IMG/VR virus record: IMGVR_UViG_3300031669_000001
Coordinates: 62,001-126,000 of that record
Strand: one strand, 5' to 3'
DNA: 64,000 nucleotides
A program made the translations under genes and the position numbers. This document shows positions 3,805 to 19,462 of this stretch, one piece after another (within the stretch, counting starts at the first letter, position 1; each line of letters begins with the position of its first letter). Below the pieces are notes generated by a model, which saw only the letters and a list, made by a program, of their open reading frames with translations, was not told where the DNA came from and ran no database searches.

Positions 3805-4535
3805 CTATCCAACCTGTTATGTGTAAAGAGTCCTTCGCCCTGCGCTACTTTAAAATCTTGCTGTTCCCACCATCGCTGAATAGATTTTTCAATATCTCCA
3901 TTGCCCATTGGAACTATGACATCTCTTAACCATTTAGTTTTGGCTATATAGGGATTATTTGTCCAGTTCGCATATTTGCTAGACGTAACATACCATTCTC
4001 GCAAACGTTGAATATGATTAGGGAATAAAATATCAGGATGTGCTTGCCAATGTAAACAATTTAGTAAATGACTTGGTGATGAGAGTTCTTTATCTTTATT
4101 CATCCCGTAAAGGGGTTTTCCAGGGTTTTCTCTGCTTCGTAATCTTATTAGGTCCGCGTTTCCATCTGTCAATAAGATCAACGCATCATGCAAAATAGAA
4201 CTAGGATCTAATAGCAATTTCCAATCATTCTCTAAAAATAAAAAATTCTCATTTTCTACAATATCAAGTAATTTTGTATACCCTTGAGCTATGCCTATAT
4301 TATTTTTTTCTCCAATATATTCATATCCAAATTCTTCTGCAATATCTTTATCTTCGCTTGACATTTCTTGAAAGAAGATAACTTTTTGCTTAGTCAACTT
4401 ATCTAATCCCAAAAATCTATAACTTTCAAGTGACACACGAAGGGTTCTATGTGATCTCCAGCTTAAAACTCCCATTGATAATTCATTCATAATCATGATC
4501 TTAGTAGTACTTTTTTGTAGTAGTTCTGTAATCAT
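3801..4535 (-). CDS. Putative GT-A glycosyltransferase
   Basis: NIGIAQG, FLFLENDW DxD-like motif, located inside the GT cluster. Confidence 0.5.
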   Translation of the reverse strand: MITELLQKSTTKIMIMNELSMGVLSWRSHRTLRVSLESYRFLGLDKLTKQKVIFFQEMSSEDKDIAEEFGYEYIGEKNNIGIAQGYTKLLDIVENENFLFLENDWKLLLDPSSILHDALILLTDGNADLIRLRSRENPGKPLYGMNKDKELSSPSHLLNCLHWQAHPDILFPNHIQRLREWYVTSSKYANWTNNPYIAKTKWLRDVIVPMGNGDIEKSIQRWWEQQDFKVAQGEGLFTHNRLDR

Positions 4536-5055
4536 AGAAGTAGAGAATCTTATTGATTCTCGCTTCTGTTTTGATCAAAGGCAACATTCTAGCTGCCCAT
4601 TCATCATCCTCACCAAAATTGATCTCCTTGAAGAGCTCAGTGCAATTGGAACGTTTATGAACCATTCGAGGGTTAGGACGTCTGTAATAAGCATCGGGCG
4701 CTTCATAATGTCCAAAATCCTTTCCATATTTTACGAGCTTTGGACGTTGACCATCGAAGGTAATCTCCACGTCGTACACTATGGTGTCAGCGTCAATATG
4801 AACTTGAGATAAGATTTGATCAACGAAATCAGGAGTAACTCGATCATCGTCATCTACATAGACGATGTACTTTCCTTTCGCCAACTTCAATAAATCATTT
4901 CTCTTCTCTCCAATGGTCCTTTTTGCATTATCAGAGATCACGAGTACTTCAACGTTATCCTTTAACTGAGGCTTTAATTGAGCCAGAAGAATATCGAGGA
5001 ATGCATTTTGTCTCTCAAGCAGAGAGCACACTAAAATCGATAGATCAATTGTCAT
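4501..5055 (-). CDS. Glycosyltransferase family 2
   Basis: TIGEKRNDLLKLAKGKYIVYVDDDD, FGEDDEW. Confidence 0.85.
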   Translation of the reverse strand: MTIDLSILVCSLLERQNAFLDILLAQLKPQLKDNVEVLVISDNAKRTIGEKRNDLLKLAKGKYIVYVDDDDRVTPDFVDQILSQVHIDADTIVYDVEITFDGQRPKLVKYGKDFGHYEAPDAYYRRPNPRMVHKRSNCTELFKEINFGEDDEWAARMLPLIKTEARINKILYFYDYRTTTKKYY

Positions 5056-5710
5056 GATGTATTTCTTTCTTTGGTTGATATTTTTTAAAGTTAATCTGAT
5101 CTTGTTTTTTAATATCTGAAAAGATATGAAGACGAGATGTAGTACTGAGTTCGGTCTGAACTTTTAAACCATTCATCGTATTTATAGTTCCATTACGAGT
5201 TAACAACCAGTTGTCACCGCACCAAATCAGCAAATCATCTGGTATTGGGATGTAATTTTTTTTGTTTACGAAGATCATGCATCCCCAACCCCACAAATTA
5301 GAAATTAACGTTTCTTGCACTTGAAAATTTTTATCTTGTTGTAGTATATAATTCTCACGTGCCATGCCGACGACTCCGTTATTTACCAAACTTCCATCAT
5401 CAAAGACCTTGAAAACTTCAGCGTTAAAGTTGATGTCATCGTTCACTAATGCGATATCATCATACTTCGCCTCCTTAACCCCCATATTCCATGCAGGGTT
5501 GACGTAGATGTTCTTTTCCATCTTCATGATCTTCAGCTTTGGGTGATCTTCTACCAGTGACTTATGAGCTGCGTCTGTCGTGAATGTGCCGATATCCGGG
5601 GCATTGTCTATGATGATTACCTCACCAACAGAGTCACAAGCGCAAAGATCTTTCACAAGTTGAACTATTCGTCTTGACTTCCAAAGAGTGGGGATTATGC
5701 AGGTAAACAT
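5045..5710 (-). CDS. Glycosyltransferase family 2 (tandem paralog A)
   Basis: CIIPTLW, IIIDNA, NIYVNPAWNMG, IALVNDDI, WCGDNW. Confidence 0.75.
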   Translation of the reverse strand: MFTCIIPTLWKSRRIVQLVKDLCACDSVGEVIIIDNAPDIGTFTTDAAHKSLVEDHPKLKIMKMEKNIYVNPAWNMGVKEAKYDDIALVNDDINFNAEVFKVFDDGSLVNNGVVGMARENYILQQDKNFQVQETLISNLWGWGCMIFVNKKNYIPIPDDLLIWCGDNWLLTRNGTINTMNGLKVQTELSTTSRLHIFSDIKKQDQINFKKYQPKKEIHHDN

Positions 5711-6345
5711 TAAGAATTTTTATATTTCGAATTAAAAATTGTAATATCATTGTTTGCAATACGCCTTAAAGCTCCATCGCTACTTGAACTACTCATTTCA
5801 GTAAGAACCTTCAATCCGTAGAGAGTATAAACTGGCATCTTCTTCGCCATCCAATTATCTCCACAGTAAATTAAAAGATCATTTGGAATTCTTACATAAT
5901 TGTCACGGTTGATCAAAATCATGCAGCCCCAACCATAATGAATGTTTCCGCGAAGAACTACTCTAAATTCTTCGTCAGCCGTTAGCTTTCTATAAGCTTC
6001 GCTGGACATGCCTACCGCGCCCTTTAACTCTTTCAAGCTACCTTCTTTGTCGAAGATCTTGAACACTTCAGCATTGAAGTTAATATCATCGTTAACGAGC
6101 GCGATGTCATCATACTTAGCCTCATGAACTCCTAGATTCCAGGCTTGATTCACGTAGATATTTTCTTTCATCTCTATGATTCTTAGCTTAGCGTGAACGT
6201 TGGTGTTTGTGTAAAGTTCTTTTGCATTCTTATGATCGTTGTCTATTACGATCACCTCTCCAACGCTGGTACAACGACATAAGTCTTTAACGAGATCTAT
6301 GATTCTTGGAGACTTCCAAATTGTAGGTATCACGCAAGTAAACAT
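5710..6345 (-). CDS. Glycosyltransferase family 2 (tandem paralog B)
   Basis: Near-identical motifs to 5045..5710 (MFTCVIPT, NIYVNQAWNLG, YDDIALVNDDINFNAEVFK). Confidence 0.75.
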   Translation of the reverse strand: MFTCVIPTIWKSPRIIDLVKDLCRCTSVGEVIVIDNDHKNAKELYTNTNVHAKLRIIEMKENIYVNQAWNLGVHEAKYDDIALVNDDINFNAEVFKIFDKEGSLKELKGAVGMSSEAYRKLTADEEFRVVLRGNIHYGWGCMILINRDNYVRIPNDLLIYCGDNWMAKKMPVYTLYGLKVLTEMSSSSSDGALRRIANNDITIFNSKYKNS

Positions 6346-6719
6346 TATTCGGCAGAACTGGAAAACTGCTTTTTAAAGTCTTCATTTTGCTTCTTGACAA
6401 GTTCAAGCTCCAGCAACAGTTCTCTGATGGTTTGCTTTGCTTGTGCTAGATCTACCTGCATCTCTACGATCTCAAATGCGCTCATCGCTTTATTCATCTT
6501 GTTGTTTTCTCCGAATATTCTTACTAAAATTTCTCGGCGCTCTTGTGGTTCGTAGATCGCCCAATCTGTAATCTCATCTATCGTCCTGAGACAACCTACA
6601 CACTTACCATTGTTTAGCCTACACAAACCTCGGCAGGGAGAAGATTCTCTGCCGAGGGATAGTAGATTTATAGGAGCTAGGTTGTAGTCAGGCCACTTAA
6701 ACGATTTCACACCCACCAC
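6345..6719 (-). CDS. DUF1289-like Cys-rich protein with coiled-coil tail
   Basis: SPCRGLCRL...CVGCLRTIDEITDW; start uncertain. Confidence 0.6.
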   Translation of the reverse strand: MVGVKSFKWPDYNLAPINLLSLGRESSPCRGLCRLNNGKCVGCLRTIDEITDWAIYEPQERREILVRIFGENNKMNKAMSAFEIVEMQVDLAQAKQTIRELLLELELVKKQNEDFKKQFSSSAE

Positions 6720-8556
6720 CAGAGCAAGCAGCCTCTTCCTTCAGAGTAGTGTTATCATCTCGTTCAACGATCTTGCTTAGGTCAATCTTACCTTTGCTCA
6801 AGACGGCCATCATCTCATCATATTTATCTTTGGTGATGTCTTCGAATGGGGCTTGAACGTAAGTTCCACCGTCGTAAGGAAGCACGGAGATGCCTGTGTA
6901 GAACTCGCGGTTCTTCCACATCCAACGGCCACACTTACCCCACTCCTTATGTTTCAGAGAGATGGTGCAAGAAACGTTGTGACGATTCTTACCTTCACGG
7001 TGACCAGTTTGAACCCATTCAATGTTGAACTTCTTGACACGTTCGAGCAGATCCAGGAAGTGTTCAGTCCTGAGGATAGAACCTTCCGGTGCCTTCTGAG
7101 GGAAGGACATGACGGCCTCGATGTGTGGCTTGTGGAAGCAATCTTCTACCAGACTTGGGAAGTTTTCCTTCATGTAATGATACAGGGCTTCATTCTTACC
7201 AACGCGCATGCGACGAACGTAGTAGTCATTGTGCCAAGCATGAATTCCAGATGAAGATCCTACAGCGCAACTTGTCGTGCCAGATGGCTTGATAGTAGTT
7301 GTTCGTGCAGCTGCATTGATCCCAAGGATTCCTGCAACGCGTGCATTTTCTTCCTTGACACCTTCAGCGGCCTGCTTGAGGTCAAGCTTCAAGATTGTGC
7401 CTGAACCGATGCCGGTGATGCCGACGCCGATCAATGCTTCCTTCTTGGTGATCTCTTCCCATTCAGGACGAAGGTAATGGAAGTCCGTGTAACCTGCCTG
7501 CAAAGTGCCAAGAAAGGCTGCAGCCTTAGTGCGAGCGTTTAGATCTTCCTGAGTCTCTACGTCAGAAGCATTCACCTCGGTGAGGTTACAGAACTGAAAT
7601 GGATTCAGGGAAATTTCACAGCAAGGGTTTGTGCCGAGGTTGACGTCATTCGTCCAAAAGATTCCAGGTTCACCTGCGCCTGACTCTTCAACGCGATCCC
7701 AGATGTCGTAGAACTCTTCATCTGTAATGTTGTTGCGTTCTAGGACGATAGAATTGTTTGCGCGACCACGCTGAGGGTTAAGTTCCCACCAAGAACCTGA
7801 CTTACATGACAACATGTCCATGTCATTCTTGGAGAACAACGAGATCATTGCAGCTCTGCGAATACCACCTGAGAGCACCGCGTCGGCAATGTGACACTGC
7901 ATGTCGTGAGCTTCTAATGATGTCAGCTTTCTGCCGGTTGCGTTGGAGAGAATAGCTCTGAGCTGTTCGATGCAGATGCGAAGAGGTGCAGAACCTGGAG
8001 CTTTACCACCACTCGTGATCAGCCTAGCACCCTTAGGGCGAATATCCCTGTAATCAAAGATTGGTTCTAGCTTACCATAAAAGTAAGATTCAACCAAGAT
8101 CTTGATAGCGTCAGCCCAACCTTCTATAGAATCTCCAATCAGGAATCTTCGATTTTTATTCTTTGGTCCTAACACGGTAGGAAGCTTCGCAACTTGATGC
8201 TGTTGAACTCCGTAGCCTACACCGGTTCCTCCAAGCAGAAGGAACATCGTTTCAGAGAATGCATCTGGGTGATCAACTGGCAAGTAAGCGCAGTTGTAGA
8301 TTCTGTTGTTTGATAACTCGATTGAGTTACCGCCAAACTGTAGAGACCTCATTGAAGGTAGAACCTTCTTTGGTATCACGTAATCGTGATATACCTTTTG
8401 AATCTCTTTCTTCAGCTTTGGATATTTTCTAACGTGCATAGCCAAGTTTCTTTGGCAGAGTTCTTCCCAAGTTTCACGTCTAGATATTTCTGGGATAAAG
8501 CGGGCGTATTTGTTGAAGATTGTTATTTCCGATAGGATTTTTTGTGAAACATCCAT
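6697..8556 (-). CDS. nrdJ: Class II (adenosylcobalamin-dependent) ribonucleotide reductase
   Basis: KYARF..RRETWEE, LPSMRSL, NCAY, TNPCCEI..FCNLTEV, TTIKPSGT, C-terminal ACSGGGCEI; start set at MDVSQ. Confidence 0.92.
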   Translation of the reverse strand: MDVSQKILSEITIFNKYARFIPEISRRETWEELCQRNLAMHVRKYPKLKKEIQKVYHDYVIPKKVLPSMRSLQFGGNSIELSNNRIYNCAYLPVDHPDAFSETMFLLLGGTGVGYGVQQHQVAKLPTVLGPKNKNRRFLIGDSIEGWADAIKILVESYFYGKLEPIFDYRDIRPKGARLITSGGKAPGSAPLRICIEQLRAILSNATGRKLTSLEAHDMQCHIADAVLSGGIRRAAMISLFSKNDMDMLSCKSGSWWELNPQRGRANNSIVLERNNITDEEFYDIWDRVEESGAGEPGIFWTNDVNLGTNPCCEISLNPFQFCNLTEVNASDVETQEDLNARTKAAAFLGTLQAGYTDFHYLRPEWEEITKKEALIGVGITGIGSGTILKLDLKQAAEGVKEENARVAGILGINAAARTTTIKPSGTTSCAVGSSSGIHAWHNDYYVRRMRVGKNEALYHYMKENFPSLVEDCFHKPHIEAVMSFPQKAPEGSILRTEHFLDLLERVKKFNIEWVQTGHREGKNRHNVSCTISLKHKEWGKCGRWMWKNREFYTGISVLPYDGGTYVQAPFEDITKDKYDEMMAVLSKGKIDLSKIVERDDNTTLKEEAACSGGGCEIV

Positions 8557-8617
8557 TTTGTTATTCCTTGTAGCTAAATTATTTTCTAAACCAGTTAGAA
8601 AAGGTGTTGCGCGCTGA

Positions 8618-8842
8618 TTATATCTGCTTGAGTCCGTGTGTTTCAATAAATTTTACTGCTTCATAAAAGTTGGTGATGATGGTGCACATCTGAGGACTTT
8701 TAGGATATGCGTAAACACCTACAGCCGTGGAAGGGTTTACGCAACCTCGTTTAAACTTCATGATAACTCCAAGATCATCTATGACTTCGTATGGAACATG
8801 CTCATATTCCAAGATAAATTTTATGGTGCTGAGCATGTCCAT
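8618..8842 (-). CDS. Small protein, possibly a degenerate glutaredoxin-like fold
   Basis: LEYEHVPYEVID and PQ..I pattern next to nrdJ, but no CxxC. Confidence 0.35.
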   Translation of the reverse strand: MDMLSTIKFILEYEHVPYEVIDDLGVIMKFKRGCVNPSTAVGVYAYPKSPQMCTIITNFYEAVKFIETHGLKQI

Positions 8843-8844
8843 GC

Positions 8845-9078
8845 TTATCTTTTGCGATCATCAATGTACGTTTGACAGTCAATGCAGAGCGTTGCACTCG
8901 GCACTGCTTCAAGTCTTGCTGTTCCAATCTCTTCACCACAATCCAAGCAGATCGTTGTTAGAGACTTTTTGTTTAACTTTTCCCTTACAGCTAAGAGTGA
9001 CTTGTCCACCTGATCCTGTTGGATGAGGAATGGTTCATCGTCACCCGTAACTTGGGTGTCTGTTATTTCACTTGACAT
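8845..9078 (-). CDS. DksA/TraR C4 zinc-finger protein
   Basis: CLDCGEEIGTARLEAVPSATLCIDCQ. Confidence 0.85.
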   Translation of the reverse strand: MSSEITDTQVTGDDEPFLIQQDQVDKSLLAVREKLNKKSLTTICLDCGEEIGTARLEAVPSATLCIDCQTYIDDRKR

Positions 9079-9081
9079 AGT

Positions 9082-9480
9082 TTAACTTGCTGCTGGTGCT
9101 GTAGGTGTAGCTGGGTCTGGAGTTGGTGAAACTTCAGGAGCTGGAGCTGGTTCTACTGGAGCTGGAGTTACAAAGTGGGCTTCAAGACGGCTGAAGAAGT
9201 CCTTAACGGCTGTTACATCTTTATCAAGAACGCTAGAAAAATCTGCTTCTAGAACTGCTAGATCTGCTTTGACAGTAGAAACTTTTGCAGCTGCGACGCT
9301 GTAAAGAGCTTCAACTTTTGCAAATTCTGCTTCAGCCTTTGTGACGCCGGCTTGTAATACTTCGCGGAATGTTGACATTTTTGGTTCCTCTTGTGGTTGT
9401 TGTGTGTTGTTTGTTGGTTCTGTTTTTGTACTGCCTGTTATGTTGCGGTAAATATCTTCTATCTCTGTGAGGATGTTCAT
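9082..9480 (-). CDS. Hypothetical coiled-coil protein with Pro-rich tail
   Basis: Ala-rich heptads and PAPVEPAPAP tail; strong internal SD (GAGGA) before MSTFREV suggests a second or true start. Confidence 0.55.
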   Translation of the reverse strand: MNILTEIEDIYRNITGSTKTEPTNNTQQPQEEPKMSTFREVLQAGVTKAEAEFAKVEALYSVAAAKVSTVKADLAVLEADFSSVLDKDVTAVKDFFSRLEAHFVTPAPVEPAPAPEVSPTPDPATPTAPAAS

Positions 9481-10325
9481 GTTGCTTTCTCCAATGATTT
9501 CTTTATCTTTTCCACCTCTGCTTGAGTGTTGTAACCCATCAAAGGATGTTTCGTTTCATATACATACGATGGATCGCCGATGTTGTAAAGATAATGAACG
9601 ATGTTTAGAAACGTCAATTCACCGGACTGGGTTGTAAATTTGACGTGACCGTCTTGATCAATTTTCAACGCTGAATAACGCATCTCTTGTAAAGCAGAAG
9701 CTACGGAATTCCACGTAACACCAAAAATTGATTGATCATGCCAGCCTTCATCTCTTACCTCGCCAAATTTAATGAAGTCGGCAGACATCGCCACGCTCAT
9801 ATCTACTCTGTCTGCAATCAGGCTGGTATTTATAGCGACGTATGGCCTGTACTCTAAAACAGCTGGAATTATAATCGATGACGCAGCAGGAGATTTTAGT
9901 CTCTCCAGCATTTCATCAACGATCTCCGCTGACCTAAGATGAGCATCACCCCATAAAATTACCGCTTGAGGAGTGACGTCGAAGCTCTTGGAAACTTTCT
10001 CAAACGCCTCCAATACAGCTTTGCCGTCTCCTCCACCACTCTCGATGCCGATAATTTTGATGTTGTTTGCGTGAAAACCTACGTGTGTATCATACACAGC
10101 TTCACTGACATAATCTTCAGCCTCATGAGATACAATGACGAAAACCTTTCTGAACTTATGCGCTACCAAATTCAGCGTGTTCTCTAAGTTTGATTTGCCA
10201 TTGATTTCTACGAGAGCTTTAGGAATGTTGATGTCACCCATTCTAGTGCCCTTGCCCGCCGCGATGATCCAAAGATCATGCTTCAAGTTGGCCTCAACTT
10301 GAGAAAGTCTAGAAAAACCACTCAT
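9477..10325 (-). CDS. Sugar-phosphate nucleotidyltransferase (GlmU-N/MurU-like)
   Basis: IIAAGKGTRMG..IPKAL, GGGDGKAV, ILWGD, GYNTQAEV. Confidence 0.85.
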   Translation of the reverse strand: MSGFSRLSQVEANLKHDLWIIAAGKGTRMGDINIPKALVEINGKSNLENTLNLVAHKFRKVFVIVSHEAEDYVSEAVYDTHVGFHANNIKIIGIESGGGDGKAVLEAFEKVSKSFDVTPQAVILWGDAHLRSAEIVDEMLERLKSPAASSIIIPAVLEYRPYVAINTSLIADRVDMSVAMSADFIKFGEVRDEGWHDQSIFGVTWNSVASALQEMRYSALKIDQDGHVKFTTQSGELTFLNIVHYLYNIGDPSYVYETKHPLMGYNTQAEVEKIKKSLEKAT

Positions 10326-12148
10326 CTCAGATTCATCCTGTAGTACATTCCAAGAGTTAGCAAAAAGACATAGGTGTCTTTTGGGTTCTTAACATTTACA
10401 AAATCCACTCTATCGTTGATGAATAGAGAGTGATCATTACCACCTTCATGCGATTCATCTCCAATGACTGTAATACGACCTTTGAGTTCTTTTAAGATGA
10501 CGTTCTTTGTAGCACCTAGAGAAATATCAATCGTCGTTCTTCCAGTAGCTTCTACAGTTAGATCCTTGAAAAGAATCCTGATGAGAGTTAAAAGCGGCAG
10601 CCTGTATTCTGGATCGATAGGCTTGATGGAAACTATCGTGTTGCTTCTATTTTGTATCTTAGACAGATTGATACCAATCTTCTCAAGGTTTGAGATTATG
10701 TGAGTGATCTGATCTTGTGAGAAGATGAATTTAGGTGCTATGATTTTTCCGGCGCTCAACGTTGTTGATGTTGAAAAATCTTGATCTGTCTCCGACGTCA
10801 ACTCATATCTGTTTACACCACCTTCCGCGAAGATAGATATGCGCGGAGATAACATTCGCAGATCACCGAAATTTATAGCCTTAATGGAATTCCCCGTGCA
10901 GATGCAGAAGCTTTTTCCCATCGATCTCAAAGTGTTCGAACAACGAATTAACAGCTCCTTGTTACTCTTCGAAGCTTCTTGATATGTAGAATTTCTGCCA
11001 ACCAAAGTATCGTCATAATCAAAAACGAAAGTGTCATTTAACATAGTTGGAAAGTAGTAATCAAACATGATCATCTTCATGAGCTTGCGACCGTCATGAG
11101 TCTTTTTATTTCCATTTACCGCGTCAGCAAGATCTGCTGATATGTATTTCCAACCTCTGTCAGTCATGAATTTAAAATCTGCTTGCATGTCAGGATCTGA
11201 TTTATCGTTGAACATGCAAACGATGTCTGTCAAGTCGAGGAATCTGGTACCTAGAATTGTTAGCATCTCACTAGCAGATACTCCAGCCATGTCTTTGTCT
11301 TGTGTATTGTTGACAACGAGAAACTTTTTAGCCTTAGATTTCTCTATAGATTCTTTGAACAAGTCATGCTGGTATGTAGGGATAAGAGATGACCATTGAG
11401 TACCAGATGAGAATATGATGACGTCAGCTTCATCAATGGCTATCAACGCATCGTTACACAAGACCCCTTTAGTTTCTTTTCCATGAGGGTCTGTGAAGAA
11501 AGTTGTTACAATCTTATCATCAGGATTATTCCAATCGACTATGTCGCCTTCATCTGAGATGATTCTTCCAGATTCTGTCCACGCTTGTAGGTAGAGTGAA
11601 TGATCATCCGCTACGATGACTGCATCTTCAGGAATCTGAAGAACGTTGCGCGCCATGATCTTACCCGCTTCTGCAAGTGAAAAGTTAGGTGCAGCTAATC
11701 CAGCATAAACGATGTTTGCGAGGGAGAAGTCAACGTAATCAACTTGAACAGCTTTCGGAAATGAGAAGTAATTCTCAACACCCTCGATCAAAGTGTTGAT
11801 CGTCAACGAATCAAGCTTGGGTGCTCGTTCATCCACGATAGACATCTTGTTGATGAGATTCAAGCACAATTCTTTTGCGTCTTGAGCCGGGCAATCAAAG
11901 CGCTTATTGAGTAGAGCTATGAGATTTTTATTCCCGCCTTGAAGTCCATATCGAAGAACCTGGTTCTTCCTAAGGTCAGACGGGCCGTTGATCTTTCCGT
12001 CAAGCACCTTTCTAACAGTGCCTGTCGACTTGCCGTTGTCTTGTGTGTTTGTGATGACACGAACGTCTACATTATTACCGTAGAGTTGGTGGAGCCCAGT
12101 TTGGATGGCGACACTTCCCGTGCCGCCGGAGAAAATCAATACATTCAT
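10322..12148 (-). CDS. CofD/YvcK(UPF0052)-family protein fused to HAD-IIB (phosphomannomutase-like) domain
   Basis: N-term FSGGTGS, NTQDNGKSTG, GPSDLRKN, EADVIIFSSGTQWSSLIP; C-term FVFDYDDTL, CTGN, FAEGG, GRTTIDI, IGDESHEGGND. Confidence 0.85.
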   Translation of the reverse strand: MNVLIFSGGTGSVAIQTGLHQLYGNNVDVRVITNTQDNGKSTGTVRKVLDGKINGPSDLRKNQVLRYGLQGGNKNLIALLNKRFDCPAQDAKELCLNLINKMSIVDERAPKLDSLTINTLIEGVENYFSFPKAVQVDYVDFSLANIVYAGLAAPNFSLAEAGKIMARNVLQIPEDAVIVADDHSLYLQAWTESGRIISDEGDIVDWNNPDDKIVTTFFTDPHGKETKGVLCNDALIAIDEADVIIFSSGTQWSSLIPTYQHDLFKESIEKSKAKKFLVVNNTQDKDMAGVSASEMLTILGTRFLDLTDIVCMFNDKSDPDMQADFKFMTDRGWKYISADLADAVNGNKKTHDGRKLMKMIMFDYYFPTMLNDTFVFDYDDTLVGRNSTYQEASKSNKELLIRCSNTLRSMGKSFCICTGNSIKAINFGDLRMLSPRISIFAEGGVNRYELTSETDQDFSTSTTLSAGKIIAPKFIFSQDQITHIISNLEKIGINLSKIQNRSNTIVSIKPIDPEYRLPLLTLIRILFKDLTVEATGRTTIDISLGATKNVILKELKGRITVIGDESHEGGNDHSLFINDRVDFVNVKNPKDTYVFLLTLGMYYRMNLR

Positions 12149-12156
12149 GTAGTGGG

Positions 12157-13179
12157 TTAGAGTTCAAGGAGTGCGCTCTTCACTCGTGGGGAGGCGGTAG
12201 TTACGTACGGCATGTAGCTAGCCAGATCTTCTGGAGATATGACAGGCTTGCGCGTATTTTCTTTCTTACAGCACATGATGGTATAACATTGTGCTAGATG
12301 AGGGTACATGTTTGCGAGAACTGCAGTTGCAAATCCTGTGCTGATCGTCTTCATGCGATCGTACATCTTACGCTGCTCAGGAGTAAACTTGTGCTTCATT
12401 GGAACTGCTTTGCCCAGCCAACCAGTGATCTGGTATGGACGTAGACCAGCTTCTTCAACTTCAGCCAGCATCTCTGGGAGGGTGAATTCATAGAGGTGAT
12501 TCTCTGGCCACGTGAACTGTTGTCCTTCATGTTTCTTTGGGTTTGGAGTGGAGATAACGATCACACCGTCATCTGTCAACATCTCCTTGGAATCCTTCAA
12601 CACGCTCTTCACACAGGGGATGCCGATGTGTTCAAGAACCTCCTGAAGCAAGATCATCTCATACTTCATCTGCTTCGCAGTTGGATCACTTTGAAACATC
12701 TTGTTGTGCCAATCAAGCAGGCGTTCTTCCATCGCGTCCATCAGGTACACATTGACTTGCTTCTTGTCAGAGTTTGCTTCGGCGTAGATCGCGTTAGCCT
12801 TCTTCACGATCTCTGGCCGAACTTCAAGACCGACGTAGTTGACGCGAGGGCGACCTGGGCTAGAGAAAGAAGACATCCAGAAGGTGTAGAACGTTGCGAT
12901 AGAACAACCAAGATCCAACACGTTCAACGCGCGTTCGATCTCTGGATAACGCAGACCGTAAAGTTCATTGCAGGCGGTGGCGTAACGGAAGATGTTAGCC
13001 ATATCCCAGCCTGAGCTGAAGTTTACCTTACCGAGAGTCGCCTTTGTAAAGAGGGCTTCATTGGAATCATCCCACAGGCGCTCATGTGAATCGAGTCGCT
13101 GGTTGGAATCATGCGCAACGTCTGCGATCTGATCATTCGCAAGTTCATCGGCGGTTGCGTCAATTGTTGTTGTGTTCAT
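12157..13179 (-). CDS. Class I SAM-dependent methyltransferase
   Basis: VLDLGCS, YVGLE, LMDA, LQEVLEHI, VISTPN. Confidence 0.8.
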   Translation of the reverse strand: MNTTTIDATADELANDQIADVAHDSNQRLDSHERLWDDSNEALFTKATLGKVNFSSGWDMANIFRYATACNELYGLRYPEIERALNVLDLGCSIATFYTFWMSSFSSPGRPRVNYVGLEVRPEIVKKANAIYAEANSDKKQVNVYLMDAMEERLLDWHNKMFQSDPTAKQMKYEMILLQEVLEHIGIPCVKSVLKDSKEMLTDDGVIVISTPNPKKHEGQQFTWPENHLYEFTLPEMLAEVEEAGLRPYQITGWLGKAVPMKHKFTPEQRKMYDRMKTISTGFATAVLANMYPHLAQCYTIMCCKKENTRKPVISPEDLASYMPYVTTASPRVKSALLEL

Positions 13180-13201
13180 TTACTTTCCTTTATTGGTTAG
13201 C

Positions 13202-13230
13202 ATTCTATCACGCGTTGAGTGGTTTGTAAA
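13202..13230 (-). promoter_or_regulatory. Early sigma70-type promoter TTTACA-17-TAGAAT with GTGA extended -10
   Basis: Read directly on the minus strand upstream of the methyltransferase. Confidence 0.75.
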
Positions 13231-13294
13231 TTTTCAGACAGTCGCCGGTTCGCCGGTTGTCTATTGAATTGTTCCAAGCGATTCATGACAGCCG

Positions 13295-13642
13295 TCAGGT
13301 TGCATCTACATCGATGCCAGCCCCGTAGTTGTCGATAGCATGATCCAAGATCGATTGACCGATGATGCCAAGCTGAACCGCGCGAAGCTGAGCGACTGTC
13401 ATTACAAGATCTTCACCACAAACATCTTTGTACAGCATCCAGATGCGGCTTCCATAGATGCCGTGAGTGTCGAGAGCCAAAACTGATCCGAGTCCACCCA
13501 TAAAATCTTGAGGGTCAATATGTGCAGCGTTCTGGTAAAGCTGCATGATGACGTTCATCGCGCCAGGATTTCCTTCGGCAAGCTTTATTACTACATCCAT
13601 AAAGCTATCTTCGAGAGTTACGCGGTCTTTAGTCTTGTTCAT
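13295..13642 (-). CDS. Hypothetical protein
   Basis: Coupled ORF with SD; LAEGNPGA motif, no function recognised. Confidence 0.6.
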   Translation of the reverse strand: MNKTKDRVTLEDSFMDVVIKLAEGNPGAMNVIMQLYQNAAHIDPQDFMGGLGSVLALDTHGIYGSRIWMLYKDVCGEDLVMTVAQLRAVQLGIIGQSILDHAIDNYGAGIDVDAT

Positions 13643-14748
13643 GTGCTTCTCCTTAGCAATTCAACAAAATTGTTGCAAAAGTCGGCAGCATCAAAGTTGA
13701 ATGCCGCCATCTGGTACTCAAGAACTTCTCGACGGGCGCCATCGTCGTCTTTCAAGATCATAATCTTTGCTTCGACGTCAACGTTATCTGTAACGTACAA
13801 AAGCTCATTGAGGTATTTGTCTTTGCCGAAGATCCGGCGGGCGCGATCCATGTCATGATCTACAAATGTTACGACTTGGGACCAAACAGATTCCGCTAAC
13901 CGTTGTGGGACGTCATCTGTGTCTTCATAGAGCTTATCGCCGATGACAACGTGAGCAAGGCTCTTGTTCATCTTCCCCATCATCTGCTCATACTTCACTG
14001 GGCCAGAAAATGTTGGAGGTCTCGGAGTCACCAAGTCAAAATCTTCTCTTTTTATCTTTCCAAAGATTTCAACTTCAATATCTTCTGAATAACCAAAGTA
14101 GAACTTCAGCATCTTTCCAGCTCTGCGACCACCTCTGAAGGTTCCACCGTAAGACAGGTCTGTAAGTGGCATGGGATTGATAGATAGTGGGGTCTGCAAA
14201 CATGGGAACTTCTCGAAAGGGTAGTGATCCATCCTCGAGATGCCGATAGCACTCTTGCTCTTGTTGACGAATTGGAGGTATTTAGCCGTGTTGTAAGGTT
14301 GGCAAATATAGTGTATGTCTGTCCTGGTGACCTCGATATTCTCGCGTTTATACAGCGAATCCTTATCCTTTGACGCGACAGAAGACCAGATCTGCTTCAA
14401 AGTGATAGCTGGATCGCACAAAATGTAGTGTACGGGGCCATTGAATCGGTTCAGGATGTGATAGTTTAGGATCTGGGCGTTGTCGAGAACACCACCGAAG
14501 AAGTTGACGTTGCCATTTATTACGACCAGAGCGTCAGCGCTTACGTCATCAAACTCTTCTTCTATCTGATGCAGCGTTACACCTTCCGGTGCTGGCTCAT
14601 CCTTATCCAGAATCTTGGTGTAGATGTGAACGTCTGCGCCGCCTAAACGAAGCATGTTGCAGATGGCTTGTGCCTCTCCAACTGAACCTGCAGAGCTCGA
14701 TGATCCAAAGGCTATTCTAGCCCCGAGTTTAACTACGGCAACTTTCAT
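13639..14748 (-). CDS. bgt: T4-like DNA beta-glucosyltransferase homolog
   Basis: Colinear with T4 BGT: MKVAVVKLG, VINGNVNFFGG, YILCDP, LSYGGTFRGGRRAGKM, EIFGK, PTFSGPV, VIGDKLYE. Confidence 0.85.
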   Translation of the reverse strand: MKVAVVKLGARIAFGSSSSAGSVGEAQAICNMLRLGGADVHIYTKILDKDEPAPEGVTLHQIEEEFDDVSADALVVINGNVNFFGGVLDNAQILNYHILNRFNGPVHYILCDPAITLKQIWSSVASKDKDSLYKRENIEVTRTDIHYICQPYNTAKYLQFVNKSKSAIGISRMDHYPFEKFPCLQTPLSINPMPLTDLSYGGTFRGGRRAGKMLKFYFGYSEDIEVEIFGKIKREDFDLVTPRPPTFSGPVKYEQMMGKMNKSLAHVVIGDKLYEDTDDVPQRLAESVWSQVVTFVDHDMDRARRIFGKDKYLNELLYVTDNVDVEAKIMILKDDDGARREVLEYQMAAFNFDAADFCNNFVELLRRST

Positions 14749-14767
14749 ACAGTTCCTCATTTTTGTT

Positions 14768-14796
14768 ATTGTACCACGATTTCTAACGAAAGTACA
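14768..14796 (-). promoter_or_regulatory. Early promoter TGTACT-17-TACAAT with GTGG extended -10
   Basis: Directly upstream of bgt. Confidence 0.7.
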
Positions 14797-14799
14797 TAG

Positions 14800-14964
14800 T
14801 TATTTGCAGAAAGCATCCCAGATCATACCAGCATTTGCAATTGCGTAACACAAGAATGCAAGAGACATTCCAGGTCTACCAACAAAGAGATAAGATCCAG
14901 ACGCCCCTAGACATAGCAGAGAACTAAGACCTAGGAATGCAAACAACCAATAAGTGGGATTCAT
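14800..14964 (-). CDS. Small hydrophobic membrane protein (54 aa, not in ORF track)
   Basis: MNPTYWLFAFLGLSSLLCLGASGSYLFVGRPGMSLAFLCYAIANAGMIWDAFCK; ATGA overlap with upstream gene. Confidence 0.55.
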   Translation of the reverse strand: MNPTYWLFAFLGLSSLLCLGASGSYLFVGRPGMSLAFLCYAIANAGMIWDAFCK

Positions 14965-15227
14965 TCATTTACCTCTTTTAATTCATCAATTGCTTTTGTT
15001 AGGTCTCTCATCTGAGCCATGGTTATGTGTTTGCGGAAGTACAGCAAGATGTATTCTATAAGTTCTATGAACGATTTGCGAACATCTTTTAACTTACCAG
15101 AAAGTCTTTCATTTTCTGCAGTCAGTCGTTCATTTTCTTTTCGAAGCTCAAAGATAGAATTTTGTTCATACCGAGCTTTGGTTTCACTTGGAGTCAGCAT
15201 ATTCTTGTCCCACATTTTTGAAGGCAA
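14961..15227 (-). CDS. Hypothetical coiled-coil protein
   Basis: ORF in co-oriented run. Confidence 0.5.
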   Translation of the reverse strand: MPSKMWDKNMLTPSETKARYEQNSIFELRKENERLTAENERLSGKLKDVRKSFIELIEYILLYFRKHITMAQMRDLTKAIDELKEVNE

Positions 15228-15633
15228 AGTCGATCATCTGTTCAGATTCGTGATCAACATAATTATCGATGTAGCCTTGGTCTAATAAAACTGAAATTCC
15301 TATCTTAACGTTGTTGCTAAACGCAGTAAAATCTCTAAAAGTTTCTACTCTTGTAACTCGAATGTTGGTAGACAGAGTCGCAGCAAGATTCTTTTCTACC
15401 GCGCTGATAAAATGACTATTAGATGTATTTGCATTGCAGTCTAAGATATTGATCATCATCCTAGACAAGGAATCTAGCATCAAGAAATAAAGATCTGAAT
15501 CTTTCTTTATGGTACACTTATCACCCACCAAGTGAATCTCAAACTTTACGTCATCATACGGTGCCATTTTTGGAAATGGCGCTGGCTTTGGTGGAATTAG
15601 AGCACTCGTTCTGAAAGGTAAGCTTATCGCCAT
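15184..15633 (-). CDS. Hypothetical protein
   Basis: ORF coupled to acb1 by TAATG overlap. Confidence 0.55.
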   Translation of the reverse strand: MAISLPFRTSALIPPKPAPFPKMAPYDDVKFEIHLVGDKCTIKKDSDLYFLMLDSLSRMMINILDCNANTSNSHFISAVEKNLAATLSTNIRVTRVETFRDFTAFSNNVKIGISVLLDQGYIDNYVDHESEQMIDFAFKNVGQEYADSK

Positions 15634-16124
15634 TACTCTTCATCTTTCCAATTTGCATTGAGAGGTTCAAAGTAGATTTCTTCAGGAACGATAGACACGT
15701 CTGGAATCTGAATCTTTGACCAATCGAATCCAGGCGCGCTGTATGATATAGTGATGTGAGCGTCATAGCTTTCAAAGTCATGAGTTGCACCACTAGCTAT
15801 CAATTTATCGTGTAGAGCTTCTAGCTCAGGTGCGTGAAGCATCAAGACCAAAACAGTCTTGTCGTGGATTTCTGATGAAGAATCCATCATTCGAAATCCA
15901 CTGATCGGGAACTTCCATCCAAGGCGCTTGAGCTCTGCATGGTCCATGTTGTGCTGCTTATCTTCAGGAACTGGCTTCCTGCTGTAGATGAGAGTTGAGT
16001 GAAAGTGATCTGGATTGATCGGGTTTGGAACGTTCCACAACGTCATCAGTGCCTTTAGAGCTTCACATGAAGCTTTATCATATCTCACCGCTGCGTAGGT
16101 ACCTGTTCTTCTTTCTGTCATCAT
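15633..16124 (-). CDS. acb1: Anti-CBASS 2H phosphodiesterase (T4 gp57B/Acb1 homolog)
   Basis: GTYAAV, VPNP..FHSTLIYSR, LVLML, GATHDF..YDAHITISY, EPLNANW are colinear with T4 Acb1. Confidence 0.9.
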   Translation of the reverse strand: MMTERRTGTYAAVRYDKASCEALKALMTLWNVPNPINPDHFHSTLIYSRKPVPEDKQHNMDHAELKRLGWKFPISGFRMMDSSSEIHDKTVLVLMLHAPELEALHDKLIASGATHDFESYDAHITISYSAPGFDWSKIQIPDVSIVPEEIYFEPLNANWKDEE

Positions 16125-18774: not shown

Positions 18775-19308
18775 TTATACCTTCAACTCAAGCTTGATAT
18801 ATTCTTGAAGGAAGAATAACTTAGCTTCTGCGGAGTTCATAGGTTCTACTGGAAATGGTGCTAATTCAAAAGTCTTAAGAAATGCCCACTTATCTTCATC
18901 AAGTGGTGAATTGATAAGTGCCAATCTTTCTGTAGCCAACATTCTTAAGTCTGCAACCTTCACTTCAGGCGGCTCTACATCAGGAAGTCCGAATCTTTCA
19001 TTGACGGCTTTTGTAACTTTTGCTTCAATTGTCCTATAATCAGGAAGCATTCTCTTCAGAGGAGAAGAAACGTCACCGATGAAAGCTTCAGGCGCATCGT
19101 GTAACAGTCCATAGAGTCTATTCTCTGGAGAGCAGAGACGTGAAACATAAACACTGTGTTGAGCAACAGAATAAAATCTGTTACAATGGCCGGTGAATCG
19201 ACAAATGTGTGATAGAGCGTGAGCTACATCTACAATCGTAAATTCACTCAGATGTGGGTTTTCAAGGTCAAAGATCTCACCGGAGTAAATTGCAATCGAA
19301 TTAGCCAT
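18775..19308 (-). CDS. HD-domain phosphohydrolase (YfbR/YfdR-like)
   Basis: AHALSHICRFTGH..FYSVAQHS, LLHDAPEAFIGD, KVAD. Confidence 0.85.
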   Translation of the reverse strand: MANSIAIYSGEIFDLENPHLSEFTIVDVAHALSHICRFTGHCNRFYSVAQHSVYVSRLCSPENRLYGLLHDAPEAFIGDVSSPLKRMLPDYRTIEAKVTKAVNERFGLPDVEPPEVKVADLRMLATERLALINSPLDEDKWAFLKTFELAPFPVEPMNSAEAKLFFLQEYIKLELKV

Positions 19309-19462
19309 CCACACTCTCCTGTATGATTTTCTTTATTTTGTTTTGGAACCGGATCTTGCCTTGATCTGACATGCAATCAAATGCAGCACCGAGTAGGGTA
19401 GACTTGTCTATTTCTTCAACGATCTTAACAACCGCGGTCTTTAGAGCATCTTCTTCTATCAT
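19301..19462 (-). CDS. Small hypothetical protein (53 aa, not in ORF track)
   Basis: MIEEDALKTAVVKIVEEIDK...; AGAGG SD; overlaps HD gene start. Confidence 0.5.
   Translation of the reverse strand: MIEEDALKTAVVKIVEEIDKSTLLGAAFDCMSDQGKIRFQNKIKKIIQESVDG

What the first reader, a model, noticed from the sequence alone, without database searches (positions are those of the whole stretch)
9477..14796. Early cassette pairing a T4 beta-glucosyltransferase homolog with its own putative donor-synthesis pathway: candidate new DNA hypermodification
Seen: a BGT homolog (13639-14748) is followed, co-oriented, by a SAM methyltransferase, a CofD/YvcK plus PMM-like HAD fusion and a sugar nucleotidyltransferase, then reads on toward nrdJ. 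Both bgt and the methyltransferase have their own early promoters, which fits DNA metabolism rather than virion assembly. Established: T4 BGT glucosylates hmC using host UDP-glucose and needs no donor-synthesis genes. Inference: this phage makes a non-standard activated donor (mutase or phosphatase, then NDP activation, CofD-type transfer, methylation) and installs an unusual, possibly methylated or phospho-linked, sugar on a modified pyrimidine. Caveat: no dCMP/dUMP hydroxymethylase or TET enzyme is in this window.
Basis: partly seen in the sequence, partly recalled or inferred. Interest (0 to 1): 0.82.

Follow-up and report, generated by a model that had tools for sequence, protein, structure and literature searches.

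The report
Jumbo-phage DNA sugar-tagging gene module
A giant phage carries a T4-type DNA glucosyltransferase gene locked together with its own sugar-activating enzymes, a three-gene set shared by many uncultured jumbo phages, which most likely lets the virus make its own sugar donor to coat its modified cytosines against host nucleases.

Summary
The cassette is real. On the minus strand lie a T4 beta-glucosyltransferase (BGT) homolog, a small ORF, a class I SAM methyltransferase, a YvcK/CofD-like plus phosphomannomutase-like HAD fusion, and a GlmU/GalU-like nucleotidyltransferase, followed by a DksA-like gene and nrdJ.

Comparative genomics turns this into a conserved module. Among 31 non-redundant loci that carry the fusion, BGT is present in 29 and the nucleotidyltransferase in at least 29. 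A gp42-like dCMP hydroxymethylase lies within 10 kb in 18. Where BGT is missing, a TET-associated glycosyltransferase or a C5 DNA methylase sits nearby. The methyltransferase occurs in only 5 of 31.

The "CofD" domain belongs to the YvcK/GlmR branch, which has shown UDP-GlcNAc uridylyltransferase activity, not to F420 CofD. The HAD domain keeps phosphomannomutase/alpha-phosphoglucomutase residues.

Best reading: a phage-made UDP-hexose supply feeds beta-glycosylation of 5hmC DNA, with optional methyl tailoring.

Not shown: the sugar's identity, any phospho-linkage, "early" promoters, or a hydroxymethylase in this genome (none in about 113 of 345 kb).

It is a new variant of a known kind. Phage-encoded donor synthesis is already known for RB69/DLP3 and predicted for SP-15.

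The parts
13639..14748 (-). T4-type DNA beta-glucosyltransferase (BGT, GT63-like) homolog, 369 aa from ATG 14748
   Evidence: Pfam PF09198 52.7 bits against cutoff 27. phrog_7922 5e-45. T4 BGT structure 1bgt 2.3e-27. T4 residues E22, D100, R191, R195 and R269 are invariant, and E272 nearly so, across 19 homologs.
13295..13642 (-). Small ORF (115 aa) of unknown function whose start overlaps the BGT stop; lineage-specific
   Evidence: No Pfam, PHROG, NCBIfam or PADLOC hit. No tblastn match outside this phage. A close relative (L049) has two small ORFs at this position.
13202..13230 (-). Sigma-70-like promoter match (TTTACA-17-TAGAAT, TG before the -10) in the gap upstream of the methyltransferase
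   Evidence: This is a consensus match only; the region as a whole is not enriched over shuffles.
12157..13179 (-). Class I SAM-dependent methyltransferase (small-molecule/O-methyltransferase type), accessory to the module
   Evidence: Methyltransf_23/31/12. Atlas neighbours are phage class I methyltransferases. No DNA-methyltransferase family hit. Homologs sit between BGT and the fusion in L049, the P0007 contig, L013/L019 and L036, and 3 kb upstream in L020.
11069..12148 (-). N-terminal YvcK/GlmR-like (CofD superfamily) domain of the 608-aa fusion protein
   Evidence: PF01933 66.9 bits. TIGR01826 YvcK 6.7e-19, below its cutoff. AlphaFold model pLDDT 93. Foldseek 2hzb/2o2z TMt 0.82-0.84 against CofD/FbiA 0.62-0.68. 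The profile aligns the GGTG, DNG-STG, PSD-R and GT-WSS motifs to YvcK structures.
10322..11041 (-). C-terminal HAD-IIB domain of the fusion, phosphomannomutase/alpha-phosphoglucomutase type
   Evidence: HAD motifs: DYDDT (D377, D379), CTGNS, K548, GDE..GGND. Foldseek matches to PMMs at TMt about 0.6. The profile hits PMM and L. lactis alpha-PGM structures down to 2.4e-11. Cap arginines R501 and R516 align with the PMM FRNG and EER arginines.
9477..10325 (-). Sugar-1-phosphate nucleotidyltransferase (GlmU N-domain/GalU-like), 282 aa; its start overlaps the fusion's stop
   Evidence: NTP_transf_3 45.3 bits. Signature AAGKGTRMG..PK is conserved. Model pLDDT 92. Foldseek matches GlmU at TMq 0.72 and UDP-glucose pyrophosphorylases.
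9082..9480 (-). orf132, unknown; its start overlaps the NTase stop. Probably co-transcribed; membership in the module is unproven
   Evidence: No family hits. Not found in relatives.

Best explanation
The core is a three-gene module: BGT, a YvcK/GlmR-like plus PMM-like fusion, and a GlmU/GalU-like nucleotidyltransferase. It lets a T4-superfamily jumbo phage make its own UDP-sugar and put it on 5-hydroxymethylcytosine in its DNA.

Proposed steps:
1. The HAD (PMM/alpha-PGM-like) domain converts a hexose-6-phosphate to the hexose-1-phosphate.
2. The nucleotidyltransferase, perhaps with the fused GlmR-like domain acting as an accessory uridylyltransferase or UDP-sugar-handling partner, makes the UDP-hexose.
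3. The BGT homolog, an inverting enzyme with Asp100-type base catalysis, transfers the sugar in beta linkage to the hydroxymethyl group of 5hmC after replication.
4. In this phage's lineage, the inserted SAM methyltransferase probably methylates the sugar, either on the donor or on DNA.

Shown here: the domain identities, the conserved catalytic residues, the conserved gene linkage, and the linkage to dCMP hydroxymethylase genes in relatives.

Inferred: every enzymatic step, the identity of the sugar (glucose or a close hexose/hexosamine), the role of the YvcK-like domain, the methylation, and that this genome makes 5hmC at all.
For: - BGT homology and invariant T4 residues E22, D100, R191, R195 and R269. 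D100 as catalytic base comes from the Lariviere 2003 title cited; the other residue roles are from my own knowledge of T4 BGT structures.
- Linkage: of 31 non-redundant fusion-bearing loci, 29 have BGT (26 directly upstream on the same strand) and at least 29 have the NTase directly downstream. The same holds in the large metagenomic contigs and in Ralstonia phage RsoM2USA and LR756500.
- ThyA-family genes 46-61% identical to T4 gp42, or carrying Asp at E. coli ThyA positions 177 and 143 with D169 retained, lie within 10 kb in 18 of 31 loci. The specificity criteria come from PMC13326640.
- In the two loci without BGT, a TET-associated glycosyltransferase (8.9e-26) or a C5 DNA methylase (7e-76) is nearby.
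- Fold and profile assignments for the YvcK/GlmR, PMM/alpha-PGM and GlmU/GalU parts.
- GlmR uridylyltransferase activity (PMC10128056 and PMC13046274).
- Natural fusions of the YvcK-like domain with the NTase domain exist (P0246, hhalign 99.3%).
- The neighbourhood is DNA metabolism: gp32, UvsX, UvsW and nrdJ.
- Precedents for phage-made donors.
Against: - No ThyA-family or hydroxymethylase gene was found in the window, nor in 39 kb to its left or 10 kb to its right. About 232 kb of the genome remains unread.
- UDP-glucose is available in almost all hosts, so strict retention of two or three donor genes suggests something beyond plain UDP-glucose supply.
- If the GlmR-like domain and the separate NTase both make UDP-sugar, they are redundant. 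That argues the YvcK-like domain does something else.
- By sequence alone, the NTase's best structural relatives are alditol-phosphate cytidylyltransferases (3f1c, 4jis).
- The methyltransferase is absent from 26 of 31 loci, and its substrate is unknown.
Confidence: 0.55

Rival explanations
1. This is the first reader's version, a phospho-linked hypermodification. The nucleotidyltransferase activates a phospho-compound as an NDP-X. The YvcK/CofD-like domain then transfers X-phosphate or sugar-1-phosphate to a hydroxyl, either on 5hmC or on the sugar already attached by BGT, and releases NMP as CofD does in F420 synthesis. The HAD domain prepares or trims a phosphate. The result is a phosphodiester-linked, possibly methylated, decoration on DNA.
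For: - The domain belongs to the CofD superfamily (PF01933) and structurally matches FbiA/CofD at E about 1e-9.
- The pairing of a CofD-superfamily domain with an NTase echoes the CofC/CofD pair (my own knowledge of the F420 pathway).
- By sequence, the NTase is nearest to IspD/TarI-type alditol-phosphate cytidylyltransferases (NCBIfam ribitol-5-P cytidylyltransferase 8.8e-10).
- Redundancy argument: a separate full NTase makes a second uridylyltransferase unnecessary.
- About 40 invariant residues in the N-domain point to an enzyme rather than a ligand sensor.
Against: - The domain is clearly closer to YvcK/GlmR than to CofD/FbiA (TMt 0.82-0.84 against 0.62-0.68; profile hits only to YvcK structures; no F420 CofD NCBIfam hit).
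- The only activity reported for that branch is uridylyl transfer.
- The full-length NTase fold matches sugar-1-P uridylyltransferases (GlmU, GalU), including the sugar-binding lobe.
- The HAD domain keeps PMM-type distal-phosphate arginines, which fits a mutase.
- No chemistry has been observed.
Confidence: 0.2
2. The module modifies DNA, but in this particular phage the acceptor is not 5hmC made by a gp42-type enzyme. It could be 5hmU, 5-hydroxycytosine, or 5hmC made post-replicatively by a C5-methylase plus a TET-like oxygenase.
For: - No ThyA-family gene in about 113 kb of this genome.
- A dCMP deaminase is present 25 kb away (L131).
- One relative (L037) pairs the donor genes with a C5 DNA methylase, and another (L033) with a TET-associated glycosyltransferase.
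- 5hoC glycosylation is now known in T4 relatives.
Against: - The BGT clade here is the same as in the 18 loci that have gp42-like genes.
- The linked ThyA homologs checked keep D169 rather than the D169N signature of 5hoC synthases (criterion).
- Two thirds of the genome was not examined, so absence is not established.
- T4 also carries a dCMP deaminase.
Confidence: 0.1
3. The fusion and NTase are not donor suppliers for DNA modification. They are host-takeover metabolism, for example rerouting UDP-GlcNAc or cell-envelope precursors as GlmR does in Firmicutes, or making a small-molecule glycoside. On this view BGT is merely a neighbour.
For: - GlmR's known biology is UDP-GlcNAc and cell-wall homeostasis.
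- A glycan-type gene island (glycosyltransferases, acetyltransferase, sulfotransferase, O-methyltransferase) lies just beyond nrdJ in this window.
- Pairings of a glycosyltransferase with a HAD-IIB phosphatase are typical of compatible-solute pathways (own knowledge).
Against: - The BGT-fusion-NTase adjacency, often with overlapping stops and starts, persists across proteins only 27-45% identical.
- BGT is replaced by another DNA glycosyltransferase family (TAGT) in L033.
- The module is linked to dCMP hydroxymethylase genes.
- The glycan island has a different GC content (0.36 against 0.41-0.49) and is absent next to the module in a relative.
Confidence: 0.08

Closest known systems
T4 gene 42 / beta-gt system (dCMP hydroxymethylase plus DNA beta-glucosyltransferase, GT63)
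   Same: - Homologous transferase, about 26-30% identity, with conserved catalytic and UDP-binding residues.
- It sits in a uvsX/gp32/uvsW DNA-metabolism neighbourhood, as in T4.
- Relatives keep a gp42-like gene close to bgt, as T4 does.
   Different: - T4 relies on host UDP-glucose. Here bgt is locked to a mutase-like/YvcK-like fusion and a nucleotidyltransferase, and in this lineage a methyltransferase.
- No gp42 homolog has yet been found in this genome.
RB69 / DLP3 / HY126 arabinosyl-5-hydroxycytosine clusters (phage-encoded UDP-arabinose synthesis plus DNA arabinosyltransferases), PMC13326640
   Same: The logic is the same: a phage DNA glycosyltransferase is clustered with a HAD-family enzyme and an NDP-sugar pyrophosphorylase that build the donor, next to a ThyA-family base-modifying enzyme.
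   Different: - Different glycosyltransferase family (GT-B GT4-like against BGT/GT63).
- Different HAD type (a phosphatase acting on a bisphosphate against a PMM-like mutase).
- A kinase and an isomerase are present there and absent here.
- There is no YvcK/CofD-like domain there.
- The base is 5hoC (D169N synthase) rather than the 5hmC signature seen in relatives here.
Bacillus phage SP-15 hypermodification cluster (predicted), PMC5977210
   Same: [quoted passage not shown]
   Different: - The base is a uracil derivative with a phosphoglucuronolactone.
- The other enzymes are teichoic-acid-type.
- There is no BGT and no YvcK-like domain.
- The assignments there are annotations, not experiments.
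YvcK/GlmR (UPF0052) of Firmicutes and Actinobacteria
   Same: Same fold and motifs. GlmR binds UDP-GlcNAc and has reported GlcNAc-1-P uridylyltransferase activity alongside GlmU, which parallels the GlmR-like plus GlmU-like pairing here.
   Different: - Only about 22% identity.
- A roughly 47-residue insertion (residues 88-134).
- Fused to a PMM-like HAD domain.
- The score is below NCBIfam's YvcK cutoff (68.5 against 196).
- Phage-encoded, and linked to DNA-modification genes rather than to yvcJ/whiA.
CofC/CofD (FbiA) of coenzyme F420 biosynthesis
   Same: Same superfamily as the N-domain, and an NTase partner gene is adjacent.
   Different: - Weaker structural match (TMt 0.62-0.68).
- No profile hit to CofD or FbiA structures.
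- The partner NTase looks like GlmU/GalU rather than CofC.
- There is no F420 context.

Membership tests
T4 DNA beta-glucosyltransferase family (Pfam PF09198, GT63) | Significant sequence match to the family model and to T4 BGT | tested here: met
   PF09198 52.7 bits against gathering score 27. phrog_7922 5e-45. 1bgt 2.3e-27 over residues 68-355.
T4 DNA beta-glucosyltransferase family (Pfam PF09198, GT63) | Catalytic base Asp100 and Glu22; UDP-phosphate/ribose ligands Arg191, Arg195, Arg269, Glu272 | tested here: met
   All are invariant in the 19-sequence alignment that includes T4, except E272, which is nearly invariant. The residue roles come from own knowledge and the Lariviere 2003 title.
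T4 DNA beta-glucosyltransferase family (Pfam PF09198, GT63) | Acts on 5hmC in duplex DNA with UDP-glucose | not testable with these tools
   Needs an enzyme assay or nucleoside mass spectrometry.
T4 DNA beta-glucosyltransferase family (Pfam PF09198, GT63) | Genome also encodes a dCMP hydroxymethylase (source of the acceptor) | tested here: inconclusive
   None in the window or in 49 kb of flanks, with about 232 kb unread. Present within 10 kb in 18 of 31 related loci, with a cytosine-specific hydroxymethylase signature.
YvcK/GlmR (UPF0052, TIGR01826) branch of the CofD superfamily | Fold and conserved motifs (GGTG; D-[DN]-G-G/x-S-T/S-G; P-G/S-D-x-R; G-P/T-G/Q-S/W-x-x-S) | tested here: met
   Foldseek 2hzb/2o2z E 1e-16, TMt 0.82-0.84. 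The profile alignment to 2ppv, 2q7x and 2hzb covers both halves of the domain and these motifs.
YvcK/GlmR (UPF0052, TIGR01826) branch of the CofD superfamily | Score above the curated family cutoff | tested here: not met
   TIGR01826 scores 68.5 bits against cutoff 196. The broader Pfam PF01933 is met (66.9 against 30). It is therefore a divergent relative, not an ortholog.
YvcK/GlmR (UPF0052, TIGR01826) branch of the CofD superfamily | Catalytic acidic pair (D40/D41 in Listeria, D38/D39 in B. subtilis) and uridylyltransferase activity | tested here: inconclusive
   The first Asp is invariant (D37), but the second position is Asn (N38). S. epidermidis YvcK 2ppv also has Asn there. The activity is not testable here.
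CofD/FbiA 2-phospho-L-lactate transferase (F420 pathway) | Closest structural and profile similarity to CofD/FbiA; CofC-type partner; F420 genes in context | tested here: not met
   - CofD/FbiA are only second-tier Foldseek hits (TMt 0.62-0.68).
- There is no CofD/FbiA hit by profile or NCBIfam.
- The partner NTase resembles GlmU/GalU.
- No F420 genes are in the window.
HAD-IIB phosphomannomutase / alpha-phosphoglucomutase family (PF03332) | HAD motifs I-IV with the DxD nucleophile and acid pair | tested here: met
   D377-Y-D379-D-T, CTGNS, K548 and G563-D-E...G-N-D572 are invariant or nearly so in 41 sequences.
HAD-IIB phosphomannomutase / alpha-phosphoglucomutase family (PF03332) | C2B cap with arginines that hold the distal phosphate (PMM2 R123, R141 region) | tested here: met
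   Invariant R501 and R516 align to the PMM 'FRNG' and 'E-E-R' segments in the profile alignments. PMM residue roles are from own knowledge.
HAD-IIB phosphomannomutase / alpha-phosphoglucomutase family (PF03332) | Score above the Pfam gathering threshold | tested here: not met
   The single sequence scores 19.2 bits against 22.4. However, the family profile hits PMM and alpha-PGM structures at 2.4e-11 to 1e-5, with Foldseek TMt about 0.6.
Sugar-1-phosphate nucleotidyltransferases (GlmU N-domain / GalU type) | G-x-G-T-R-x(n)-P-K signature and a full pyrophosphorylase fold with a sugar-binding lobe | tested here: met
   AAGKGTRMG...PK is conserved. NTP_transf_3 scores 45.3 against 27 and NTP_transferase 21.6 against 21.2. 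Foldseek matches GlmU at TMq 0.72 and GalU at TMt up to 0.73.
Class I SAM-dependent methyltransferases | Rossmann-type SAM-binding motifs; family model above threshold | tested here: met
   Methyltransf_23 scores 42.6 against 27. The motif LDxGC..TFY and the LLQEVLEHI segment are conserved in 5 homologs. No DNA-methyltransferase family matched.

The most novel reading that the evidence does not exclude
The YvcK/CofD-like domain does CofD-style chemistry on DNA-bound sugar or on 5hmC itself. On this reading, this widespread jumbo-phage lineage carries a phosphodiester-linked sugar on cytosine, and in this phage's clade an O-methylated one. That would be a chemical class of DNA hypermodification not yet described, and the first catalytic role of this superfamily on nucleic acid.
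Probability: 0.18. Interest if true: 0.85.

Novelty: new variant of a known kind. Interest (0 to 1): 0.62.

Why it matters
Glycosylated hydroxymethylcytosine is the classic phage shield against restriction enzymes and CRISPR nucleases. How phages obtain or diversify the sugar donor has only recently become a research topic.

This work defines a compact, strongly conserved module: a BGT, a YvcK/GlmR-PMM fusion and a nucleotidyltransferase. It is found in at least 181 protein clusters at 50% identity, mostly on 100-430 kb phage contigs. It has no description that I could find in the literature.

The module gives the enigmatic YvcK/CofD-like fold a new, testable context. It predicts modified DNA in the cultured Ralstonia phage RsoM2USA. 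It may also supply new DNA-glycosylating and sugar-activating enzymes for epigenomic tools. If the sugar is non-standard or methylated, that adds a new DNA modification.

Tried and rejected
- Near-identity DNA search of 9000-15000 against phage records: no match.
- Looking for the hydroxymethylase of this genome:
  - Pfam over all window ORFs of at least 100 aa.
  - tblastn with T4 gp42, E. coli ThyA, RB69 gp48 and two jumbo-phage homologs against the window and against 49 kb of flanking contig obtained by walking.
  - Two pattern scans of IMG/VR with ThyA-family alignments.
  - Result: nothing was found, and absence is not proven.
- The 274-aa ORF next to the dCMP deaminase (L131:15720-16544) was suspected to be a divergent ThyA. 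Rejected (Pfam none, hhalign probability 0.2%).
- BFVD fold search for annotated viral relatives of the fusion: only HAD hits, no YvcK-like viral protein.
- PADLOC on the small unknown ORFs: nothing.
- The idea that a 1007-aa relative (P0263) is a BGT-fusion Rosetta stone: rejected.
- TET/JBP near the C5-methylase locus L037 or the TAGT locus L033: not found in the ORFs scanned.
- Methyltransferase substrate: PDB sequence search empty, and the Atlas gave only generic phage class I methyltransferases.
- Literature searches for CofD or 2-phospho-L-lactate transferase with phage glucosyltransferase found no paper.
- I did not use sequencing-run tools, because short reads cannot show these base modifications.

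Full report
**What is in the sequence**

Between 9082 and 14748, all on the minus strand, lie six tightly packed ORFs.
- A BGT homolog at 13639-14748.
- A 115-aa ORF at 13295-13642.
- A SAM methyltransferase at 12157-13179.
- A 608-aa fusion protein at 10322-12148.
- A nucleotidyltransferase at 9477-10325.
- A 132-aa ORF at 9082-9480.

Downstream follow a DksA-type zinc-finger protein, a 74-aa ORF and a class II-like ribonucleotide reductase at 6697-8646.

The family assignments hold up.
- BGT: PF09198 5.5e-14, phrog_7922 5e-45.
- Methyltransferase: Methyltransf_23 6.9e-11.
- Fusion: CofD family 2.2e-18, with weak PMM/Hydrolase_3 hits at the C-terminus.
- Nucleotidyltransferase: NTP_transf_3 1.4e-11.
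- Reductase: phrog_367 2.3e-120.

Homologs begin MK[VI]AV, and a GAGGA precedes it.

The window belongs to a T4-superfamily phage. It encodes gp23, gp15, the gp21 protease, sheath, TerL, gp32, UvsX and UvsW. It comes from a 345,069-bp IMG/VR contig. An identical stretch exists in an independent ENA assembly.

**Promoters**

The statement that bgt and the methyltransferase each have an early promoter is not supported as an observation.
- The sigma-70 consensus scan gives 11 sites against 12.4 +/- 3.3 in shuffles.
- One respectable match (TTTACA-17-TAGAAT with TG) sits in the 115-bp gap before the methyltransferase.
- Before bgt there is only a TGGTACAAT extended -10-like element.
- Timing cannot be inferred from the sequence.

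**The cassette is a conserved module**

tblastn against phage records finds the fusion in only two: Ralstonia jumbo phage RsoM2USA and the uncultured 462-kb phage LR756500. Both also carry the BGT and NTase homologs nearby. All of these genes are annotated as hypothetical in RsoM2USA.

In metagenomes the fusion is common.
- At least 519 full-length homologs appear in the word-indexed search.
- An exhaustive search gives 742 representatives at 50% clustering, 181 of them below 1e-30. Nearly all are 560-640 aa and match end to end.

I examined contexts on large contigs and 38 IMG/VR loci, analysed with tblastn. After collapsing to 31 non-redundant loci, the counts are as follows.
- BGT is present in 29, and in 26 it lies directly upstream on the same strand.
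- The NTase is found directly downstream in 27 by tblastn.
- Two further cases add to the NTase count: a divergent copy in L039 recognised by profile comparison (99.9%), and the RsoM2USA copy at the other end of the linear record.

The proteins in these loci are only 27-45% identical to the window's, so the linkage is old and under selection.

Some relatives fuse the YvcK-like domain and the NTase into one roughly 790-aa protein (P0246). That is independent evidence that the two work together.

**Link to modified cytosine**

- In 18 of the 31 loci a thymidylate-synthase-family gene lies within 10 kb. Most are 46-61% identical to T4 gp42.
- In LR756500 it sits between bgt and the NTase. In RsoM2USA it is ORF10, about 5 kb upstream of bgt and near a dCMP deaminase.
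- Criteria from PMC13326640 are these: ThyA N177 sets base specificity, L143 tracks hydroxymethyl against methyl products, and D169N marks 5-hydroxycytosine synthases.
- By these criteria, the homologs have Asp at 177 and at 143 and keep D169, like T4 gp42. They are predicted dCMP hydroxymethylases.
- The two loci without BGT are informative. L033 has a TET-associated glycosyltransferase (PF20691, 8.9e-26) 2 kb upstream of the fusion-NTase pair. L037 has a C5 DNA methylase (7e-76) 2.3 kb upstream.
- So the fusion-NTase pair travels with different DNA-cytosine modification enzymes. That fits a donor-supply role for DNA glycosylation.

**What the parts look like**

BGT keeps T4's E22, D100, R191, R195 and R269, and nearly always E272, across 19 aligned sequences. 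D100 is the catalytic base (title cited). The other roles are from my knowledge of the T4 structures.

The fusion models confidently as one unit (pLDDT 93, pTM 0.91).
- Its N-domain matches YvcK/UPF0052 structures best (TMt 0.82-0.84, E 1e-16). CofD/FbiA match less well (TMt 0.62-0.68).
- A family profile hits only YvcK structures and aligns all hallmark motifs.
- YvcK/GlmR binds UDP-GlcNAc and was reported to synthesise UDP-GlcNAc from GlcNAc-1-P and UTP. An acidic pair is needed for that activity (PMC10128056 and PMC13046274).
- The phage domain keeps the first Asp (D37) and has Asn next to it, as one staphylococcal YvcK does.
- Its C-domain is a HAD-IIB enzyme with all four motifs.
- It matches eukaryote-type phosphomannomutases and Lactococcus alpha-phosphoglucomutase. 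Invariant cap arginines align with the PMM phosphate-binding arginines.

The NTase model (pLDDT 92) superposes over its full length on the GlmU pyrophosphorylase domain and on UDP-glucose pyrophosphorylases. By sequence alone, however, its nearest solved relatives are IspD/TarI-type enzymes.

The methyltransferase is a generic class I enzyme of the small-molecule type, common in phages.

**Most likely mechanism**

1. Hexose-6-phosphate is converted to hexose-1-phosphate by the PMM-like domain.
2. UDP-hexose is made by the NTase, with the fused GlmR-like domain as a second uridylyltransferase or UDP-sugar-handling partner.
3. The sugar is beta-transferred to 5hmC in DNA by the BGT homolog.
4. 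In this lineage the sugar is optionally methylated.

I give this 0.55.

The weak points are these.
- Two enzymes appear redundant for NDP-sugar formation.
- It is unclear why a phage would so faithfully keep genes for a donor as common as UDP-glucose. That hints at a non-standard sugar.
- A hydroxymethylase is still missing from this genome.

On the last point, I read the 64-kb window plus 39 kb to the left and 10 kb to the right by walking the ENA contig. I found a dCMP deaminase, a clamp loader and nucleoside deoxyribosyltransferase-like genes, but no ThyA-family gene. About 232 kb remains unread.

**Rivals**

It is the best way to explain the redundancy, but the domain's closest kin argue against it.
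- A different acceptor base in this phage: 0.1.
- A non-DNA role: 0.08. The conserved linkage, and the TAGT and C5-methylase contexts, argue against it.

**The methyltransferase**

It is present in only 5 of 31 non-redundant loci, so it is not core. Yet it recurs between bgt and the fusion in this phage's close relatives (81% identity in L049; also the P0007 contig) and in distant ones (L013/L019, L036). That recurrence supports a tailoring role rather than a chance insertion.

**Novelty**

Phage-encoded donor synthesis for DNA glycosylation is established for arabinosyl-5hoC phages and predicted for SP-15. The principle is therefore known.

This particular triad is new to the literature I could search, especially the YvcK/GlmR-PMM fusion and its tight coupling to a BGT clade in jumbo phages. 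It is also unannotated in RsoM2USA. I rate it a new variant of a known kind, with interest 0.62.

Noticed in passing
window 353-6345 (minus strand): A low-GC island (0.36 against 0.41-0.49 for its neighbours) just beyond nrdJ and a DUF1289 gene. It holds nine glycan-type genes:
- a sulfotransferase
- a hexapeptide acyltransferase
- three to four GT2 glycosyltransferases
- a GT1 glycosyltransferase
- a TylF-like O-methyltransferase

It could tailor a virion, host-surface or even DNA glycan. It is present in the independent ENA assembly but absent next to the module in a relative.
   Followed up: partly
window 15633-16124 (minus strand): An Acb1 anti-CBASS phosphodiesterase homolog (PF23474, 3.1e-29) lies two genes upstream of bgt. 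The same Acb1-then-bgt arrangement is kept in the close relatives L049 and the P0007 contig.
   Followed up: partly
L033:7247-8218 and L037:5768-6979: In the two related loci that lack BGT, the fusion-NTase pair sits near a TET-associated glycosyltransferase (L033) or a C5 cytosine DNA methylase (L037). This suggests the donor genes serve several different DNA-cytosine glycosylation systems. No TET/JBP gene was seen in the ORFs scanned.
   Followed up: partly
P0246 (789 aa) and about seven similar representatives of 770-807 aa: Natural single-chain fusions of the YvcK-like domain with a C-terminal NTase domain. Between them is a middle region that only faintly resembles the HAD cap, possibly a degenerate HAD.
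   Followed up: partly
L131:15172-16544 (same phage, about 25 kb left of the window): A dCMP deaminase gene is followed, with overlapping stop and start, by a 274-aa ORF that has no detectable family. It is not a ThyA homolog.
   Followed up: yes
window 18775-19314 (minus strand): A weak YfbR-like HD-domain 5'-deoxynucleotidase hit (3.8e-4), kept at the same position in relative L049. HD-domain genes also lie near the module in other contigs (L004 and the P0089 contig). It might be the dCTP/dCMP-clearing function that T4 gets from gp56.
   Followed up: no
L001:9056-9895 (RsoM2USA ORF5) and L004:7808-8623: A DDAH/arginine-deiminase-like (amidinotransferase-superfamily) gene lies just upstream of bgt in two distant module-bearing phages. 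It is not in this window.
   Followed up: no
window 32922-33365 (minus strand): A TnsA-like endonuclease domain protein (PF08722, 3.1e-20) is embedded among phage genes. The window also encodes an ADP-ribosyltransferase-toxin-like domain, an Mtd_N/collagen-repeat protein and several GIY-YIG/NUMOD homing-endonuclease-like genes, whose positions were not mapped.
   Followed up: no
window 14800-14964 (minus strand): A 54-aa strongly hydrophobic ORF lies directly upstream of bgt, leaving only about 50 bp for any bgt-specific promoter.
   Followed up: no
window 1-64000: No tRNA genes were found in the window (ARAGORN), although the related jumbo phage RsoM2USA is reported to carry 44.
   Followed up: yes
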